From positions 83,204,001 to 83,268,000 of the forward strand of contig NC_079167.1 in NCBI RefSeq assembly GCF_947568905.1: DNA of 64,000 nucleotides, given 5' to 3'. The stretch is from Ostrea edulis. Its lineage: Eukaryota. The position numbers were made by a program, and so were the translations under genes. Shown here piece after piece: positions 35,401 through 39,739 of this stretch (its first letter is position 1; each line of letters begins with the position of its first letter). Below the pieces are notes generated by a model. It did no database searches, was not told the DNA's origin, and saw nothing but the letters and a program-made list of their open reading frames with translations.

Positions 35401-38400
35401 AAATGACCGTGTGAAAAATAGTTGAAAACAGTGTACCATAAATCAGGATATTTTTGCTGACTACAAATTTTTAGCAATTTAGTGGCTGTATTGAATTTAT
35501 GAAAATGATTATGATAAATATCTTACAAATATTTTCATATTGTCTTTAAGCAACAATTATATGAATTTACAAGATCTTCCAATTTCAAAGTTTCTGTGTA
35601 TACTAATTAATGGTGTAGCGGACAGTATAAGAGGGAACTTATACTGCCTCGCCAGAGAGCTAGCTTTTCTAGTGATGTGGTAGAGTCTCTCTCTTGATCA
35701 CGCAAGTTAAGCAACAGTGAGCATGATCAACACTTGGCTGGGTGACTGCTACACATTACAAATTGGTGGCATCGTAGTGACTCTGGTGTTTGGCGGGAGG
35801 CCTGCTTCAGGTAGAATCTTTTCGGAGCTCTGAGTACGGACGTGGATTCGTCCGGGACGACAGTGGTTGTCACCGGGAACGGCGGGTGCCGTTACTAAGC
35901 GGATGCTGTTACTGAGCAGGTGCCAAACACTCCGAGAGGACTCACGCTAAGCTTCGGGACGAAGCTTCCCCAAGTGGGGGGAAGTGTAGCGGTCAGTATA
36001 AGAGGGAACTTATCCGGCCTCGCCAGAGAGCTAGCTTTTCTAGTGATGTGGTAGAGTCTCTCTCTTGATCACGCAAGTTAAGCAACGGTGAGCGTGATCA
36101 GCACTTGGCTGGGTGACCGCTACACGTTACAATGGTTTATTACAAGATTCATTCACCTAATTGTGTGTGTTTGTTATAACATATGAATCCATGTTTAGAA
36201 AGGTTTAAAAAAAAGCTTATTTTGAAGTGTTGAATCTTCATTTCGGGGTACAACTATTATATCGTGTTAGTTTTGTTGTAGCATTCAAAGCTCTCTTAGA
36301 CAACTATGAGCTGGAGTGTGGGAAACAAGAAGTGGTAACAAATGAAGTTTTGTTGTAGCATTCAAAGCTCTCTTAGACAACTATGAGCTGGAGTGTGGGG
36401 AACAAGAAGTGGTAACAAATGAAGAGAGGAAGGAGAATCGGGATTTTATCGATGCCATTATGGAGACGGATGTAATGCAGGAAGCTCACCGCTACCTGGT
36501 GGAGAAAAACAAAGCACCTACGGATGAGATCGAGTTTAAACGGCTTCTCTACAAAACCTGGTTCAATCTTATACGCAGGACAAAGGGTGACAGGTGAGCT
36601 TCAGAGGCCTCCAATCTATAACGTATCAATCTCAGAGTATATGTATCAAGCCTCCAATCTATAAAGTATATGTATTAAGCCTCCAATCTATAGAGTATAT
36701 GTATCAAGCCTCCAATCTATAGAGTACATGTATCAAGCCTCCAATCTATAGAGTATATGTATCAAGCCTCCAATCTATAGAGTACATGTATCAAGCCTCC
36801 AATCTATAGAGTATATGTATCAAGCCTCCAATCTATAGAGTATATGTATAAAGCCTCCAATCTATAGAGTATATGTATCAAGCCTCCAATCTATAGAGTA
36901 TATGTATCAAGCCTCCAATCTATAGAGTACATGTATCAAGCCTCCAATCTATAGAGTACATGTATCAAATCTCCAATCTATAGAGTACATGTATCAAGCC
37001 TCCAATCTATAGAGTACATGTATCAAGTCTCCAATCTATAGAGTACATGTATCAAATCTCCAATCTATAAAGTACATGTATCAAGCCTCCAATCTATAGA
37101 GTACATGTATCAAGCCTCCAATCTATAGAGTACATGTATCAAGCCTCCAATCTATAAAGTATATGTATCAAGCCTCCAATCTATAAATTACATGTATCAA
37201 GCCTCCAATCTATAAAGTATATGTATCAAGCCTCCAATCTATAGAGTACATGTATCAAGCCTCCAATCTATAGAGTACATGTATCAAGCCTCCAATCTAT
37301 AGAGTATATGTATCAAGCCTCCAATCTATAGAGTACATGTATCAAGTCTCCAATCTATAGAGTACATGTATCAAGCCTCCAATCTATAGAGTACATGTAT
37401 CAAGCCTCCAATCTATAGAGTACATGTATCAAGCCTCCAATCTATAACGTATCAATCTCAGCATTGTTCATTTACTTGGTTTTCTGTGAGATAATTATTT
37501 TATAAATCACATTGTTCATTTACTGACTGCCCCTCTATCTGTTTGGTCATCTGTGAGATGATAGTTTTATAAATCACATTGTTGATTTACTTGGTTATCT
37601 GTGAGATGATAGTTTTATAAATCACATTGTTGATTTACTTGGTTTTCTGTGAGATAATAATTTTATAAATCACATTGTCGATTTACTTGGTTATCTGTGA
37701 GATAATAATTTTATAAATCACATTGTTGATTTACTTGGTTTTCTGTGAGATAATAGTTTTATAAATCACATTGTTGATTTACTTGGTTATCTGTGAGATA
37801 ATAGTTTTATAAATCACATTGTTGATTTACTTGGTTATCTGTGAGATAATAGTTTTATAAATCACATTGTTGATTTACTTGGTTATCTGTGAGATAATAA
37901 TTTTATAAATCACATTGTCGATTTACTTGGTTATCTGTGAGATGATAGTTTTATAAATCACATTGTTGATTTACTTGGTTTTCTGTGAGATAATAATTTT
38001 ATAAATCACATTGTCGATTTACTTGGTTATCTGTGAGATAATAATTTTATAAATCACATTGTTGATTTACTTGGTTTTCTGTGAGATAATAGTTTTATAA
38101 ATCACATTGTTGATTTACTTGGTTTTCTGTAAGATAATATTTTTATAAATCACATTGTTGATTTACTTGGTTTTCTGTGAGATAATTATTTTATAAATCA
38201 CATTGTCTTTGTATGTTTTGACAGTGTAAAGAGAAAATTTTGGACTGAAAATTGAACCCATACTAGGTTAAATTTTCAGTCCATTACTAGTCAGGTGCTC
38301 TAACCACTGAGCCATCTGAACAGTCCAATATCCACAGTCCATATAGCCCTAAAGTTCTGCTACAGTTTCCTCCCTCCTTAGATTGCCTTCACCCTTGAAG

Positions 38401-39739
38401 ACACACAACTCAGATTCTTCTGCTCCTGGCATGGTCACCAGCTCCTAATGTAATACATGTATATTGAAAAGGAGAAAATTTTGGGCTGGACCAGGATTCG
38501 AACCCGGGACCCCTGCATTACTAGTCAGGTTCTCTAACCACTGAGCTACCCAGGCTGATATCCATGGTCCATATAGCCCTAAATACTGCTTCATTTAATG
38601 GTTAATTTTCTTTAATTTTTATACATCTTTTGTGCTGAAAACATGCAATTGTTTGCAAATGAAATAAATGGCTTGATAATACTGAGATCTATATAGATGC
38701 GACATTTGACAGCCAGAGCCTCCTACAATGACAGCTGGATTGACATTGTGGTGTCTAACTCATTCCTTAGGGTGGCTTTCAGATGACCACATGATTTTTA
38801 TTTCAACATTTTGATGTCACGCTTAAGTCCTATTTCACACTCCATTTTTTCAACGTTTTTTGTGGCAACATCGCATTAGAAAGTAAATGTTGTATGTTCC
38901 CTCTATGTTTTGGCATTTTCTCAGAGCATTAGTTCAGTGTTAACTGTTTGCATTATTTTCAGGGACTTTGATTCCAGCAGCTTTGAGCACGTTTTCGTGG
39001 GCGAGGGTCGTGAAGATGATTTTATCGGCCTTCATAACTGGATTCAGTTCTACCTTCAGGAGAAAGCAGGAAACATTGACTATCACGGCTATTTCCGACG
39101 AGAAACGGTGAGTCACAGGATATTTCCTTTTAATTTACCACGTATTACTCACTGTAATAAAGATTTTATATCCACTTTTTGACCAAAGGCTGTGCTCTAT
39201 CTGTAGAGACTTTCATTATATGTACTGTACAGTAAAATATGGTTATAGCGAACGTCAAGGGTCGGCAAAAAACAGTTCATGATAACAAACTTCGTTATAT
39301 CCAATACGAGTTTTGTTATTTTCCTCTTATGGGGGATTAATATCACTTTGCAATAAGCATGAATTCGTCATAAGCATGTTCATTGTAAACATGTTTTACA
39401 ATAGTAAAGATTTCATTAGAATATCAAAAAATACCCATAGTAATGAGCATTTTTATGGAAGTTATATACATGATATTTTAGGTGAAGGATGACGACTATT
39501 TCCGATTAATAGCTCTTCAGTTCAGCTGGCGGGGAGAAAAAGGGAAGCCAATGAGCTCATGCTTCTTGGGGACCAGCCCAGAATTTGAGATTGCAGCATA
39601 CACAGTGTGCTTCCTGAGCGGTAAACACGGACGTAACATGGATGTTCAGCTTGGCGAGTATGAGGTGGAAATCAGCTGTCTTCCTCTCGGACACCACTGC
39701 ATCGGAACGGCCTACATCGCTGCTGCCAGGATGAACTAG
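32477..39739 (+). CDS. ENDOU: Poly(U)-specific endoribonuclease (EndoU/XendoU family)
   Basis: Exons 32477-32493 (tentative, phase-compatible), 34829-34929, 35282-35383, 36359-36593, 38963-39107 and 39482-39739. Motifs [62 protein letters not shown]; the catalytic His/His/Lys residues are present. Confidence 0.92.
32796..33039. mobile_element. MITE with CAGTG(A/G)(C/T)GGATCCA TIRs
   Basis: cagtgacggatcca ... tggatccaccactg, with tttac on both flanks. Confidence 0.7.
35614..36131 (+). mobile_element. TRIM (miniature LTR retrotransposon) with 5S rRNA-derived LTRs (Cassandra/Ajax-like)
   Basis: Two 147-bp TG..CA LTRs (35614-35760, 35985-36131), PBS at 35764-35780, PPT at 35972-35984, TSD ATGG. 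The LTR 3' half matches the 5S A-box/C-box region. Confidence 0.9.
36271..36424 (+). repeat. 77-bp tandem duplication of an ENDOU acceptor plus 66 nt of exon
   Basis: ttttgttgtag|cattcaaagc...aaatgaag occurs twice, with 1 mismatch. Confidence 0.95.
36605..37461. repeat. 29-bp minisatellite, about 28 copies, immediately after an ENDOU donor
   Basis: aagcctccaatctatagagta(c/t)atgtatc units; both ends share gcctccaatctataacgtatcaatctcag. Confidence 0.95.
37462..38207. repeat. 48-bp minisatellite, about 15 copies
   Basis: atcacattgttgatttacttggttatctgtgagataatagttttataa units. Confidence 0.95.
38219..38593 (-). mobile_element. tRNA-Thr-carrying TRIM (Helenus-like), diverged copy
   Basis: Two LTR-like repeats (about 38447-38593 and 38219-38364), each with gggctatatggac...ctcagtggttagag..cctgactagtaatg; PPT aaggagggagg before the 3' LTR. 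Confidence 0.75.
39230..39401. mobile_element. Tc1/mariner MITE, same family as 20984-21153 in the opposite orientation
   Basis: TA|CAGTAAAATATGGTTAT start; gaattcgtcataagcatgttcatt is the near reverse complement of the internal segment of the other copy. Confidence 0.7.

What the first reader, a model, noticed from the sequence alone, without database searches (positions are those of the whole stretch)
35614..36131. Complete miniature LTR retrotransposon with 5S rRNA Pol III promoters in both LTRs (Cassandra/Ajax-like) in a bivalve-type genome
Seen: two 147-bp LTRs starting TG and ending CA; PBS tggtggcatcgtagtga 3 nt after LTR1; PPT aagtggggggaag directly before LTR2; a 224-bp noncoding interior; and a perfect 4-bp TSD (ATGG). 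The PBS matches TGGTGGCAGCGGTGGGA, the complement of the tRNA-Leu 3' end, at 13 of 17 positions. The LTR segment gatcacgcaagttaagcaacggtgagcgtgatcagcacttggctgggtgaccgc aligns with the internal control region of invertebrate 5S rRNA (GATCACCGAAGTTAAGCAACGTCGAGCCCGGTTAGTACTTGGATGGGTGACCGC, from memory), keeping the A box and C box. Established, as I recall: 5S-carrying TRIMs are Cassandra in plants and Ajax in nemerteans, the latter with 5-bp TSDs. Inference: a mollusc element with a 4-bp TSD and a Leu PBS could be a new or independent lineage mobilised by a Gypsy-type integrase and transcribed by Pol III via TFIIIA.
Basis: partly seen in the sequence, partly recalled or inferred. Interest (0 to 1): 0.9.

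Follow-up and report, generated by a model that had tools for sequence, protein, structure and literature searches.

The report
Oyster mini-retrotransposon with 5S promoter
This is a real 518-bp non-coding jumping element of an oyster genome whose two end repeats carry the internal promoter of the 5S ribosomal RNA gene, a design known so far only from plants (Cassandra) and ribbon worms (Ajax), and here a likely helper retrotransposon can be named.

Summary
The copy has two 147-bp TG..CA LTRs, an AAT spacer, a PBS, a 224-bp non-coding interior, a PPT and an ATGG target-site duplication.

It belongs to a family of at least about 200 full-length copies. Fifteen of 26 complete copies have perfect 4-bp duplications, each different. 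Three copies have identical or nearly identical LTR pairs, so the family was active recently.

LTR positions 83-136 match the host's own 5S gene at positions 41-94 (44 of 54). That is box A to box C only, and the Rfam 5S model does not match.

Older copies carry a PBS perfectly complementary, over 20 nt, to the host tRNA-Leu(AAG). One fossil copied 47 nt of that tRNA.

A low-copy Ty3/Gypsy family has the same PBS and the same LTR end (ACGTTACA). It is found fused to a family member in a way that a template switch at the PBS explains. It is a candidate helper.

Pol III transcription is inferred, not shown. A conserved TTTT lies about 10 nt after the predicted start.

I found no report of such an element from molluscs. 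I classify it as a new member of the known TRIMp3 kind. Descent shared with Ajax is undecided.

The scan noted the same family at two other places in this genome.

The parts
35610..35613 (.). Left target-site duplication ATGG
   Evidence: The same four bases follow the element at 36132-36135. The 4-bp rule holds in 15 of 26 complete copies.
35614..35760 (+). 5' LTR, 147 bp, TG..CA
   Evidence: It is 94.6% identical to the 3' LTR. Several differences are at CpG sites, where most family copies and the 3' LTR keep the CpG and the 5' LTR has lost it.
35626..35633 (+). TATA-like motif TATAAGAG, LTR positions 13-20
   Evidence: Conserved in nearly all copies and both LTRs. It starts 78 nt before AAGTTAAGC, which is -30 relative to the position equivalent to 5S +1 (LTR position 43, window 35656). 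The role is inferred.
35665..35668 (+). TTTT run, LTR positions 52-55
   Evidence: The only T4 run conserved in the family: 25 of 30 5' LTRs and 29 of 30 3' LTRs. It lies at about +10 to +13 of the predicted Pol III transcript, so it is either a leaky terminator or the 3' end signal.
35696..35749 (+). 5S-derived segment in the 5' LTR (5S positions 41-94; box A about 35705-35719, intermediate element about 35722-35727, box C about 35735-35749)
   Evidence: Alignment to the host 5S gene, score 51 against 14.6 +/- 2.1 for shuffles. The Rfam 5S model gives no match even at E up to 10.
35761..35780 (+). AAT spacer (35761-35763) and primer-binding site (35764-35780)
   Evidence: The family's main form is TGGTGGCAGCGTAGTGA. 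Older copies have 18-20 nt (mostly 20) perfectly complementary to the host tRNA-Leu(AAG) plus CCA.
35781..35971 (+). Non-coding structured interior
   Evidence: No room for gag or pol. The RNA fold is -89.7 kcal/mol, z = -2.5, with a long stem pairing 35781-35794 with about 35923-35939. The middle part, 35851-35940, is the most variable among copies. The TTTT at 35818-35821 is private to this copy.
35945..35965 (+). CGCTAAG followed by the hairpin GCTTCG-GGA-CGAAGC, ending 19 nt before the 3' LTR
   Evidence: Conserved in the copies and folded as a hairpin. A hairpin of the same type (..CG-RGA-CG..) lies 17 nt before the 3' LTR of the candidate Gypsy helper. By eye it is also present in the Ajax and oyster Helenus consensus sequences.
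35972..35984 (+). Polypurine tract AAGTGGGGGGAAG
   Evidence: The G run varies in length among copies.
35985..36131 (+). 3' LTR, 147 bp (TATA-like motif 35997-36004, TTTT 36036-36039, 5S-derived segment 36067-36120)
   Evidence: The 5S-derived segment matches the host 5S gene at 44 of 54 positions, score 63 against 14.9 +/- 2.3.
36132..36135 (.). Right target-site duplication ATGG

Best explanation
It is one copy, a few percent diverged, of a family of terminal-repeat retrotransposons in miniature (TRIM) in an oyster genome. The family is of the kind Kojima named TRIMp3: the LTR carries a small-RNA-gene promoter.

**Shown**
- The element has the full LTR-PBS-interior-PPT-LTR anatomy.
- It is dispersed in hundreds of copies with 4-bp target duplications.
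- It was active recently.
- It is primed by tRNA-Leu(AAG).
- Each LTR keeps only the internal control region of the 5S rRNA gene (box A, a partly changed intermediate element, box C), placed at the 3' end of the LTR.

**Inferred**
- TFIIIA, TFIIIC and TFIIIB assemble on this region, helped by a TATA-like motif at -30.
- RNA polymerase III starts near LTR position 43 (window 35656).
- The RNA runs through the interior into the 3' LTR, which gives the terminal redundancy needed for strand transfer. That redundancy is either the 13 nt up to the conserved TTTT or the rest of the LTR, if the TTTT is leaky.
- The RNA is packaged, reverse-transcribed and integrated by the proteins of a Ty3/Gypsy element. 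That element uses the same tRNA-Leu primer and the same LTR end. It has a Pol II-type LTR of its own and looks like a relative of Repbase Gypsy-130_CGi.
For: **Anatomy and family**
- Anatomy.
- Family size: 42 scored full-length matches. The 34-nt 5S-like core occurs 384 times and the LTR-end-plus-PBS junction 196 times, each within 3 mismatches. The ratio of about 2 means few solo LTRs.
- Duplications: 15 of 26 perfect and all different.
- Recent activity: LTR pairs are identical in L002 and L004 and differ by one base in L003.

**5S origin**
- 44 of 54 positions match the host 5S gene, far above shuffles.
- Against the family's commonest core sequence, box A is 14 of 15 identical and the first 15 positions of box C are 14 of 15 identical.
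- No similarity is detectable to roughly the first 30 positions of 5S or beyond position 94.
- So exactly the part bound by TFIIIA is kept, as in Ajax.

**No Pol II end signal**
- There is no AATAAA or ATTAAA in the LTR. The Gypsy LTR has both a TATA box and AATAAA.

**Primer**
- 18-20 nt (mostly 20) of perfect complementarity to the host tRNA-Leu(AAG) plus CCA in older copies.
- Locus L054 holds an LTR followed by a 47-nt copy of that tRNA's 3' end (45 of 47), then an inverted LTR start. This is a fossil of primer read-through.

**Helper**
- L053 carries a family LTR plus a perfect PBS joined to protease, RT, RNase H and integrase remnants.
- These are followed by that Gypsy family's own 494-bp LTR, then the TAAAAT spacer, a TRIM-type PBS, the TRIM interior and a TRIM LTR. 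The flanks are CCAG and CCAT.
- Native Gypsy copies have ..ACGTTACA, TAAAAT and a tRNA-Leu PBS.
- Kojima's Figure S2 lists Gypsy-130_CGi with TAAATT followed by TGGTGGCAG.
Against: - No transcript start or end could be read. All runs laid were contigs, and RNA evidence is limited to LTR-bearing contigs of uncertain meaning.
- The conserved TTTT at +10 to +13 would stop Pol III early if it is an efficient terminator.
- The intermediate element differs from the host 5S gene at about 3 positions.
- T-run avoidance in the element is not significant.
- The TATA-like motif could equally serve Pol II.
- Helper evidence rests on one chimeric locus plus short shared signals. The LTR bodies are unrelated, and the region before the PPT is only weakly alike (58 of 2000 shuffles reach the score).
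- The ending GTTACA is common among oyster TRIM consensus sequences, so it is not specific.
Confidence: 0.65

Rival explanations
1. The element is an ordinary Pol II-transcribed TRIM. The 5S piece is a passenger, a fossil of a 5S gene or 5S-derived SINE fragment captured in an ancestral LTR. Transcription starts about 30 nt after the TATA-like motif.
For: - TATAAGAG is conserved at LTR positions 13-20.
- The TTTT at LTR positions 52-55 would not trouble Pol II.
- The intermediate element is partly changed.
- Conservation among copies is flat along the LTR, so it says nothing about constraint on the boxes.
Against: - There is no polyadenylation signal anywhere in the LTR, unlike the Gypsy LTR.
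- What is retained of 5S is exactly box A to box C, and those two boxes are the best-kept parts.
- The TATA-like motif sits at -30 of the 5S-equivalent start. By eye, the two Ajax consensus sequences have the same 78-79 nt spacing to box A.
- Cassandra, the validated case, is transcribed from its 5S promoter according to PMC10886601.
Confidence: 0.25
2. It is a true member of the Ajax lineage, sharing descent with the nemertean elements, rather than an independent capture of a 5S promoter in molluscs.
For: All points below were read by eye from the consensus sequences printed.
- The 5S part is restricted to box A-box C and placed at the 3' end of an LTR of 147-163 bp.
- TATA-to-box-A spacing is 78-79 nt in all three elements.
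- CTTT and CTAGTG motifs occur between the predicted start and box A.
- The changes GAGCG and TCA are shared where 5S has GAGCC and TTA.
- Both are assigned a tRNA-Leu primer.
- CGCTAAG followed by a small CG-RGA-CG hairpin lies before the PPT.
Against: - The duplication is 4 bp here and 5 bp in Ajax.
- The interior is twice as long (224 against 108-113 bp).
- The Ajax PBS match is only 6 nt.
- The hairpin type also occurs in oyster Helenus and in the Gypsy candidate, so it may be a helper-imposed signal rather than inheritance.
- A similar by-eye impression of kinship with a Helenus-like copy in this same window was not borne out by alignment.
Confidence: 0.3
3. The Gypsy-TRIM chimera on C9 is an accident (a nested insertion, DNA-level rearrangement or assembly error), and the real helper is some other LTR retrotransposon.
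For: - It is a single locus.
- The flanks match at only 3 of 4 positions.
- The Gypsy family is low-copy, with about 5 internal copies and mostly lone LTRs.
- The LTR bodies are unrelated.
Against: - It is not a simple nested insertion. The Gypsy part lacks its 5' LTR and starts exactly inside the PBS.
- The left PBS is Gypsy-type after the TRIM spacer, and the right PBS is TRIM-type after the Gypsy spacer. A switch within TGGTGGCAGCG would produce exactly this.
- A genome-wide search for the perfect 20-nt tRNA-Leu PBS three bases after a CA (the TRIM spacing; the Gypsy's 6-nt spacer was not covered) found only 7 sites, all behind this family's LTR.
Confidence: 0.35
4. It is a chance tandem duplication of a 5S-derived SINE, not an LTR element. 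This is the refutation the first reader named.
For: None found.
Against: - Hundreds of copies have the same two-LTR structure, PBS and PPT, with different 4-bp duplications.
- There is a tRNA primer read-through fossil.
Confidence: 0.01

Closest known systems
Ajax (Ajax-1_NGe, Ajax-1_LiLo), 5S-promoter TRIM of heteronemerteans; Kojima 2024, PMC10886601
   Same: - A miniature LTR element of 421-434 bp, against 518 bp here, with LTRs of 154-163 bp against 147 bp.
- The LTR holds only box A, the intermediate element and box C of 5S, placed near its 3' end.
- The primer is assigned to tRNA-Leu.
- There is no functional 5S RNA.
- By eye, the TATA-like motif has the same spacing to box A, and a similar hairpin lies before the PPT.
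   Different: - The duplication is 4 bp here, not 5 bp.
- The host is a mollusc.
- The PBS is far longer and clearer, 20 nt in old copies against 6 nt.
- The interior is twice as long.
- A conserved TTTT follows the predicted start, where Ajax has TTT.
- A candidate helper is identified here; none is known for Ajax.
Cassandra, 5S-carrying TRIM of plants (Kalendar et al. 2008; Maiwald et al. 2024, PMC10853983)
   Same: It is a non-autonomous LTR element whose LTRs carry the 5S Pol III promoter in place of a Pol II promoter. Three-LTR tandem forms occur: one is seen here at C4:21003310-21004167, and Cassandra forms arrays (PMC7215508).
   Different: Cassandra keeps a long 5S-like stretch that folds like 5S RNA. 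It is 565-860 bp long and its host is a plant. Here only 54 nt of 5S remain and the Rfam 5S model does not match. The origins are almost certainly independent.
Helenus of pteriomorph bivalves, tRNA-promoter TRIM (Kojima 2024)
   Same: - Same host group, same size class and 4-bp duplications.
- LTR ends of the type TGTAGC../..TTACA.
- A TATA-like motif close to the LTR start.
- A small hairpin before the PPT.
- A decayed Helenus-2-like copy lies 2.4 kb away in this window.
   Different: - The promoter module is tRNA-derived, not 5S-derived.
- In the part of Kojima's Figure S2 that I read, bivalve Helenus families pair with tRNA-Lys, His, Ile, Pro or Glu, none with Leu.
- There is no significant alignment between the two elements of this window.
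SINE3 (5S-derived SINEs of fishes, mammals, lepidopterans)
   Same: The head is derived from the 5S internal promoter, and the element is short and non-coding.
   Different: SINE3 elements have no LTRs, PBS or PPT and depend on LINEs. Here the full LTR-retrotransposon anatomy and tRNA priming are present.
biv-TRIM (Satovic et al. 2019, PMC6934838)
   Same: It is a TRIM of bivalves.
   Different: It is a different family: it has no canonical PBS, has a conserved TGATCCCAAAGGAC segment that is absent here, and was not detected in Ostrea edulis.

Membership tests
TRIM (terminal-repeat retrotransposon in miniature) | Two direct terminal repeats of about 100-250 bp with TG..CA ends | tested here: met
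   147-bp LTRs, 94.6% identical.
TRIM (terminal-repeat retrotransposon in miniature) | PBS complementary to a tRNA 3' end just after the 5' LTR, and a PPT just before the 3' LTR | tested here: met
   The PBS starts 3 nt after the LTR. There are 18-20 nt (mostly 20) of perfect match to the host tRNA-Leu(AAG) plus CCA in older copies, and 11 contiguous nt in the main form. The PPT is conserved.
TRIM (terminal-repeat retrotransposon in miniature) | Under 1 kb, no coding capacity, dispersed copies with target-site duplications | tested here: met
   518 bp with a 224-bp interior. At least 196 LTR-PBS junctions in the genome. Perfect 4-bp duplications in 15 of 26 copies.
TRIMp3 (TRIM with a Pol III promoter from a small RNA gene) | A small-RNA-gene-derived promoter sequence inside the LTR | tested here: met
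   LTR positions 83-136 match host 5S positions 41-94 at 44 of 54, score 63 against 14.9 +/- 2.3.
TRIMp3 (TRIM with a Pol III promoter from a small RNA gene) | Transcription by RNA polymerase III from that promoter | not testable with these tools
   Only contigs were available to lay, so there is no start or end information.
Ajax | The 5S-derived part covers only box A, the intermediate element and box C; no 5S-like RNA | tested here: met
   definition.
Ajax | 5-bp target-site duplication | tested here: not met
   It is 4 bp here. Ajax makes 5 bp (Table S2).
Ajax | Sequence homology to the Ajax-1 consensus outside the 5S part | tested here: inconclusive
   Only a by-eye comparison with the letters printed: shared spacing, CTAGTG, and CGCTAAG plus hairpin. 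No statistical alignment was possible without a reference for those letters.
Cassandra | A near-complete 5S-like sequence in the LTR that folds like 5S RNA | tested here: not met
   The Rfam 5S_rRNA model gives no match at E up to 10. Similarity is limited to 5S positions 41-94.
Helenus | A tRNA-like sequence in the LTR | tested here: not met
   Neither Rfam nor ARAGORN finds a tRNA in 35614-36131.
SINE3 | 5S-derived head plus a LINE-related tail, with no LTR, PBS or PPT | tested here: not met
   Full LTR anatomy and tRNA priming are present.
Type 1 (5S-type) Pol III promoter | Box A, intermediate element and box C at the 5S spacing | tested here: inconclusive
   Against the family's commonest sequence, box A is 14 of 15 identical, the first 15 positions of box C are 14 of 15 identical, and the spacing is ungapped. 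About half of the intermediate element is changed and the last 3 positions of box C are lost. Function was not tested.

The most novel reading that the evidence does not exclude
This oyster family and the nemertean Ajax may be branches of one ancient lophotrochozoan lineage of 5S-promoter TRIMs, kept alive by one clade of tRNA-Leu-primed Ty3/Gypsy elements. If so, the C9 recombinant is the first direct trace of co-packaging of a TRIMp3 RNA with its helper. No helper is known for Cassandra or Ajax.
Probability: 0.3. Interest if true: 0.65.

Novelty: new member of a known kind. Interest (0 to 1): 0.5.

Why it matters
**Why the kind is rare.** LTR retrotransposons that swap their Pol II promoter for a 5S Pol III promoter were known from plants (Cassandra) and two ribbon worms (Ajax). 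Neither has a known helper element.

**What this family adds.** A third host group is now involved, with young copies (some with identical LTRs), a clear tRNA-Leu primer, a primer read-through fossil and a named candidate helper. That makes three questions testable in an animal with good genomic resources:
- How can a Pol III transcript meet the needs of LTR reverse transcription, namely terminal redundancy and getting past T runs?
- How is such an RNA recognised by a helper whose LTRs are unrelated?
- Does the TRIM promoter track the host 5S promoter, as reported for Cassandra?

**Practical point.** The 5S-like cores (at least 384 in this genome) can be mistaken for 5S pseudogenes in annotation.

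Tried and rejected
- **Rfam scan.** At gathering and at E up to 10 there was no 5S match in the element. So it is not a 5S gene or pseudogene copy, only the control region.
- **tRNA for the main PBS form.** I searched for a host tRNA that fits TCACTACGCTGCCA. There is none; the three hits have no tRNA gene by ARAGORN. So the main PBS is a diverged tRNA-Leu site.
- **Read laying.** Four runs were laid, all as contigs. It shows the family in two other coded organisms and an LTR in one RNA-Seq contig. It gives no start, end or strand, so it does not support expression.
- **T-run avoidance as a sign of Pol III.** Not significant: 2 runs observed against 1.2 expected.
- **Conservation profile among copies.** Flat at 0.91-0.96 except in the middle of the interior, as expected for neutral decay. 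It is not informative about the boxes.
- **TRIM as a deletion derivative of the Gypsy.** Rejected. There is no significant match between the TRIM interior or LTR and the Gypsy outside the short terminal signals.
- **A common chassis with the Helenus-like copy in this window.** No significant alignment.
- **biv-TRIM identity.** Rejected.
- **Further loci** (3' ends of native Gypsy copies and their duplications).
- **Consensus sequences.** None was built for either element.
Full report
**1. The observation**

- Two 147-bp direct repeats lie at 35614-35760 and 35985-36131. They begin TG, end CA and are 94.6% identical: 8 differences, 5 of them transitions.
- The four bases ATGG lie on both sides (35610-35613 and 36132-36135).
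- After the 5' LTR come AAT and then TGGTGGCATCGTAGTGA (35764-35780).
- AAGTGGGGGGAAG (35972-35984) lies directly before the 3' LTR.
- The interior is 224 bp.

**2. It is a family, not a chance duplication**

- A search of the window's own genome (895 Mb; the window is C4:83204001-83268000) gave 42 scored matches, nearly all over the full 518 bp at 78-92% identity, and 1414 first-look candidates.
- In 30 fetched copies the ends are TGTAGC.. and ..GTTACA. The flanks are unrelated from copy to copy (majority fraction about 0.4, against 0.91-0.96 inside).
- Fifteen of 26 copies with complete ends have a perfect 4-bp duplication, each of different sequence. Six more match at 3 of 4.
- Exact-pattern counts with up to 3 mismatches give 384 copies of a 34-nt piece of the 5S-like core and 196 LTR-end-plus-PBS junctions. 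That is about two LTRs per interior, so solo LTRs are rare.
- One place (C4:21003310-21004167) has two matches that overlap by one LTR, which is a three-LTR tandem.
- LTR pairs are identical in L002 and L004 and differ by one base in L003. Other copies range down to about 83%. The family has therefore been active over a long period, up to very recently.
- The window copy is of middle age. Several of its private changes are at CpG sites.

**3. The 5S piece**

- The genome's own 5S genes were found with the Rfam model: 119 nt, in arrays on C6 and C3.
- LTR positions 83-136 align without a gap to 5S positions 41-94. For the 3' LTR this is 44 of 54, score 63, against 14.9 +/- 2.3 for shuffles and 15 for the opposite strand.
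- Using the family's commonest sequence, box A is 14 of 15 identical and the first 15 positions of box C are 14 of 15 identical. The stretch between them, which includes the intermediate element, is 11 of 15.
- No similarity is detectable to roughly the first 30 positions of 5S or beyond position 94.
- The Rfam 5S model does not match the element even at E up to 10.
- What is kept is therefore the internal control region and nothing else. Kojima described the same for Ajax.

**4. Other conserved LTR features**

- TATAAGAG lies at LTR positions 13-20, starting 78 nt before AAGTTAAGC. That is -30 from the position equivalent to 5S +1 (LTR 43).
- A TTTT lies at LTR positions 52-55. It is the only T4 run conserved in the family (25 of 30 and 29 of 30 LTRs).
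- The TTTT at 35818-35821 of the window copy is private; other copies read TCTCTTC there.
- The LTR has no AATAAA or ATTAAA.
- The host 5S genes do not have the TATA-like motif at -30. They end in TTTT followed three bases later by a T8 run. This hints that a T4 run alone may not be a full stop in this animal.
- T-run avoidance over the whole element is not significant.

**5. The primer**

- The main PBS form is TGGTGGCAGCGTAGTGA. Nine copies examined have TGGTGGCAGCGGTGGGA, in eight of them continuing ..TTC.
- The longer form is the exact complement of the last 17 nt plus CCA of the host tRNA-Leu(AAG) genes. Those genes were found by pattern (19 sites) and confirmed by ARAGORN.
- No host tRNA fits the main form. 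The main form is thus a diverged tRNA-Leu site with 11 contiguous matches.
- Locus L054 (C5, near 69611100) holds a family LTR, AAT, and then 47 nt matching the complement of the tRNA's 3' end at 45 of 47. Both differences are G to A at CpG. An 18-nt inverted copy of the LTR start follows.
- This is what an integrated plus-strand strong-stop DNA that read on into its primer would look like. It is direct evidence that tRNA-Leu(AAG) primes the family.
- The copy stops just before the base 3' of the anticodon. In eukaryotic tRNA-Leu that base is usually a methylated G that blocks reverse transcriptase. This last point is inference from general knowledge.

**6. A candidate helper**

- Two of the seven perfect-PBS sites were not followed by the TRIM interior.
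- One of them, read as L053 (C9:25649500-25659499, minus strand), has this order:
  1. flank CCAG;
  2. a full family LTR, AAT, and a 21-nt perfect PBS;
  3. a leader, then remnants of aspartic protease, RT, RNase H, integrase zinc-binding domain and integrase core, in the Ty3/Gypsy order and broken into several ORFs;
  4. a 494-bp unit;
  5. TAAAAT and a TRIM-type PBS (..GCGTAGTGA);
  6. the TRIM interior and PPT;
  7. a family LTR lacking its first 23 nt;
  8. flank CCAT.
- The 494-bp unit is the Gypsy family's own LTR. It occurs at least 25 times. In native copies (L057, L058) it stands in front of the same leader.
- That LTR has a TATA box and AATAAA. It starts TGAAGC (the TRIM starts TGTAGC) and ends ACGTTACA, the same eight bases as the TRIM. 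It is followed by TAAAAT and a tRNA-Leu PBS.
- The bodies of the two LTRs are unrelated.
- The 60 nt before the 3' LTR are only weakly alike (58 of 2000 shuffles reach the score). However, both hold a 6-bp hairpin of the form ..CG-RGA-CG.., ending 17-19 nt before the LTR.
- The chimera is not a plain nested insertion. The Gypsy part has no 5' LTR and begins inside the PBS. The two PBS copies are reciprocal hybrids: TRIM spacer with a Gypsy-type PBS tail, and Gypsy spacer with a TRIM-type tail.
- One reverse-transcription event explains all junctions. Minus-strand synthesis on a TRIM RNA switches at the PBS to a co-packaged Gypsy RNA. It runs through that RNA's U5-R, jumps to its 3' end and copies it back to the PBS. 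The TRIM plus-strand strong-stop DNA then lands on that PBS.
- Recombination of a one-LTR circle with a resident TRIM at the PBS would give the same map.
- Either route needs the two elements to meet through their shared primer site. I take this as moderate evidence that this Gypsy family, or a close relative, is the helper.
- Kojima's Figure S2 lists Repbase Gypsy-130_CGi of the Pacific oyster with TAAATT followed by TGGTGGCAG under tRNA-Leu-AAG. That is a likely relative. Only those 23 letters could be compared.

**7. How it most likely works**

- Shown: the anatomy, spread, duplication length, recency, primer identity and the 5S origin of the LTR segment.
- Inferred: Pol III starts near LTR position 43, directed by TFIIIA on box A and box C with TFIIIB over the TATA-like motif. 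The RNA carries U5, the PBS, the structured interior (z = -2.5), the PPT and the 3' LTR.
- The terminal redundancy is either LTR 43-55, if the TTTT of the 3' LTR ends the RNA, or LTR 43-147, if transcription runs into the flank.
- In both cases the TTTT of the 5' LTR must be passed. This is the weakest point of the Pol III model.
- The rival is Pol II transcription from the TATA-like motif with the 5S piece as a passenger. It explains the TTTT. It does not explain the missing poly(A) signal or the selective retention of exactly the control region.
- I put Pol III at about 0.55-0.6 and the Gypsy helper at about 0.55.

**8. Comparison with what is known**

- Kojima 2024 (PMC10886601) defines Ajax and Helenus and groups them with Cassandra as TRIMp3.
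  - Ajax is a 5S-promoter TRIM of two nemerteans, with 5-bp duplications.
  - Helenus is a tRNA-promoter TRIM, present in pteriomorph bivalves, with 4-bp duplications.
- The oyster family meets the TRIM and TRIMp3 sequence criteria. It fails the Ajax duplication length, the Cassandra full-5S criterion and the Helenus tRNA criterion.
- By eye, against the consensus letters printed, it shares several features with Ajax: placement of the 5S part, the 78-79 nt spacing from TATA to box A, CTAGTG upstream of box A, GAGCG and TCA in place of the 5S letters, and CGCTAAG plus a hairpin before the PPT.
- The hairpin type also occurs in oyster Helenus consensus sequences and in the Gypsy candidate. It may therefore be a signal imposed by the helper clade.
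- A similar impression of kinship with a decayed Helenus-2-like copy in this same window (about 38228-38597, minus strand) was not borne out by alignment.
- Common descent with Ajax is therefore open, at about 0.3.
- biv-TRIM of Satovic et al. is a different family.

**9. Novelty**

- Full-text searches found no 5S-promoter TRIM reported from molluscs. A 2024 review lists only Cassandra and Ajax.
- Repbase and Dfam could not be searched.
- First-stage readers of this scan noted the same kind of element at two other places in this genome. That is consistent with the copy number and is not independent support.
- Earlier notes of the scan call the genome the flat oyster. Runs labelled oyster metagenome hold the locus.

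**10. Verdict**

It is a real, well-formed, recently active 5S-promoter TRIM of an oyster, and a new member of a known kind. Three points go beyond the published cases: a well-supported tRNA-Leu primer with a read-through fossil, 4-bp duplications, and a candidate Ty3/Gypsy helper supported by a recombinant copy. Pol III transcription remains to be shown.

Noticed in passing
window 38228-38597 (- strand): A decayed tRNA-promoter TRIM of the Helenus-2 type. It has two LTRs with TATATGG and a tRNA-like sequence; Rfam tRNA scores 37.9 bits at 38483-38555, and ARAGORN calls an aberrant anticodon loop. It also has a small hairpin and the PPT TAAGGAGGGAGGAA. It lies 2.4 kb from the 5S-type TRIM.
   Followed up: partly
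L054 1353-1575 (G000:C5, near 69611100): [quoted passage not shown] This is an integrated aberrant strong-stop DNA. The copy stops just before the base 3' of the anticodon.
   Followed up: yes
L053 3506-3949 (- strand): An ORF of 147 aa with a C2H2 zinc finger (Pfam PF13909, E = 1.7e-6) lies downstream of the integrase remnants of the Gypsy element and before its 3' LTR.
   Followed up: no
window 36269-36424, 36627-37446, 37543-38235: Three tandem arrays lie just downstream of the element: a 77-bp unit in 2 copies, a 29-bp unit in 28 copies, and a 48-bp unit in at least 9.5 copies, which runs up to the Helenus-like copy.
   Followed up: no
window 36047-36058 (LTR positions 63-74): The 12-mer TGTGGTAGAGTC inside the LTR is identical to the first 12 bases of the Helenus-1_CGi LTR consensus printed. 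This may be the trace of an older LTR terminus, so the LTR may be composite.
   Followed up: no
G000:C4:21003310-21004167 (not fetched): Two full-length matches overlap by one LTR, giving an LTR-interior-LTR-interior-LTR tandem like the arrays described for Cassandra.
   Followed up: no
G000:C1:64584318, 65036150, 65256679, 65438205 (not fetched): Four LTR cores with the same private variant (AAGTTAAAC..) lie on the same strand within 0.9 Mb of chromosome 1. They may be part of a segmental duplication.
   Followed up: no
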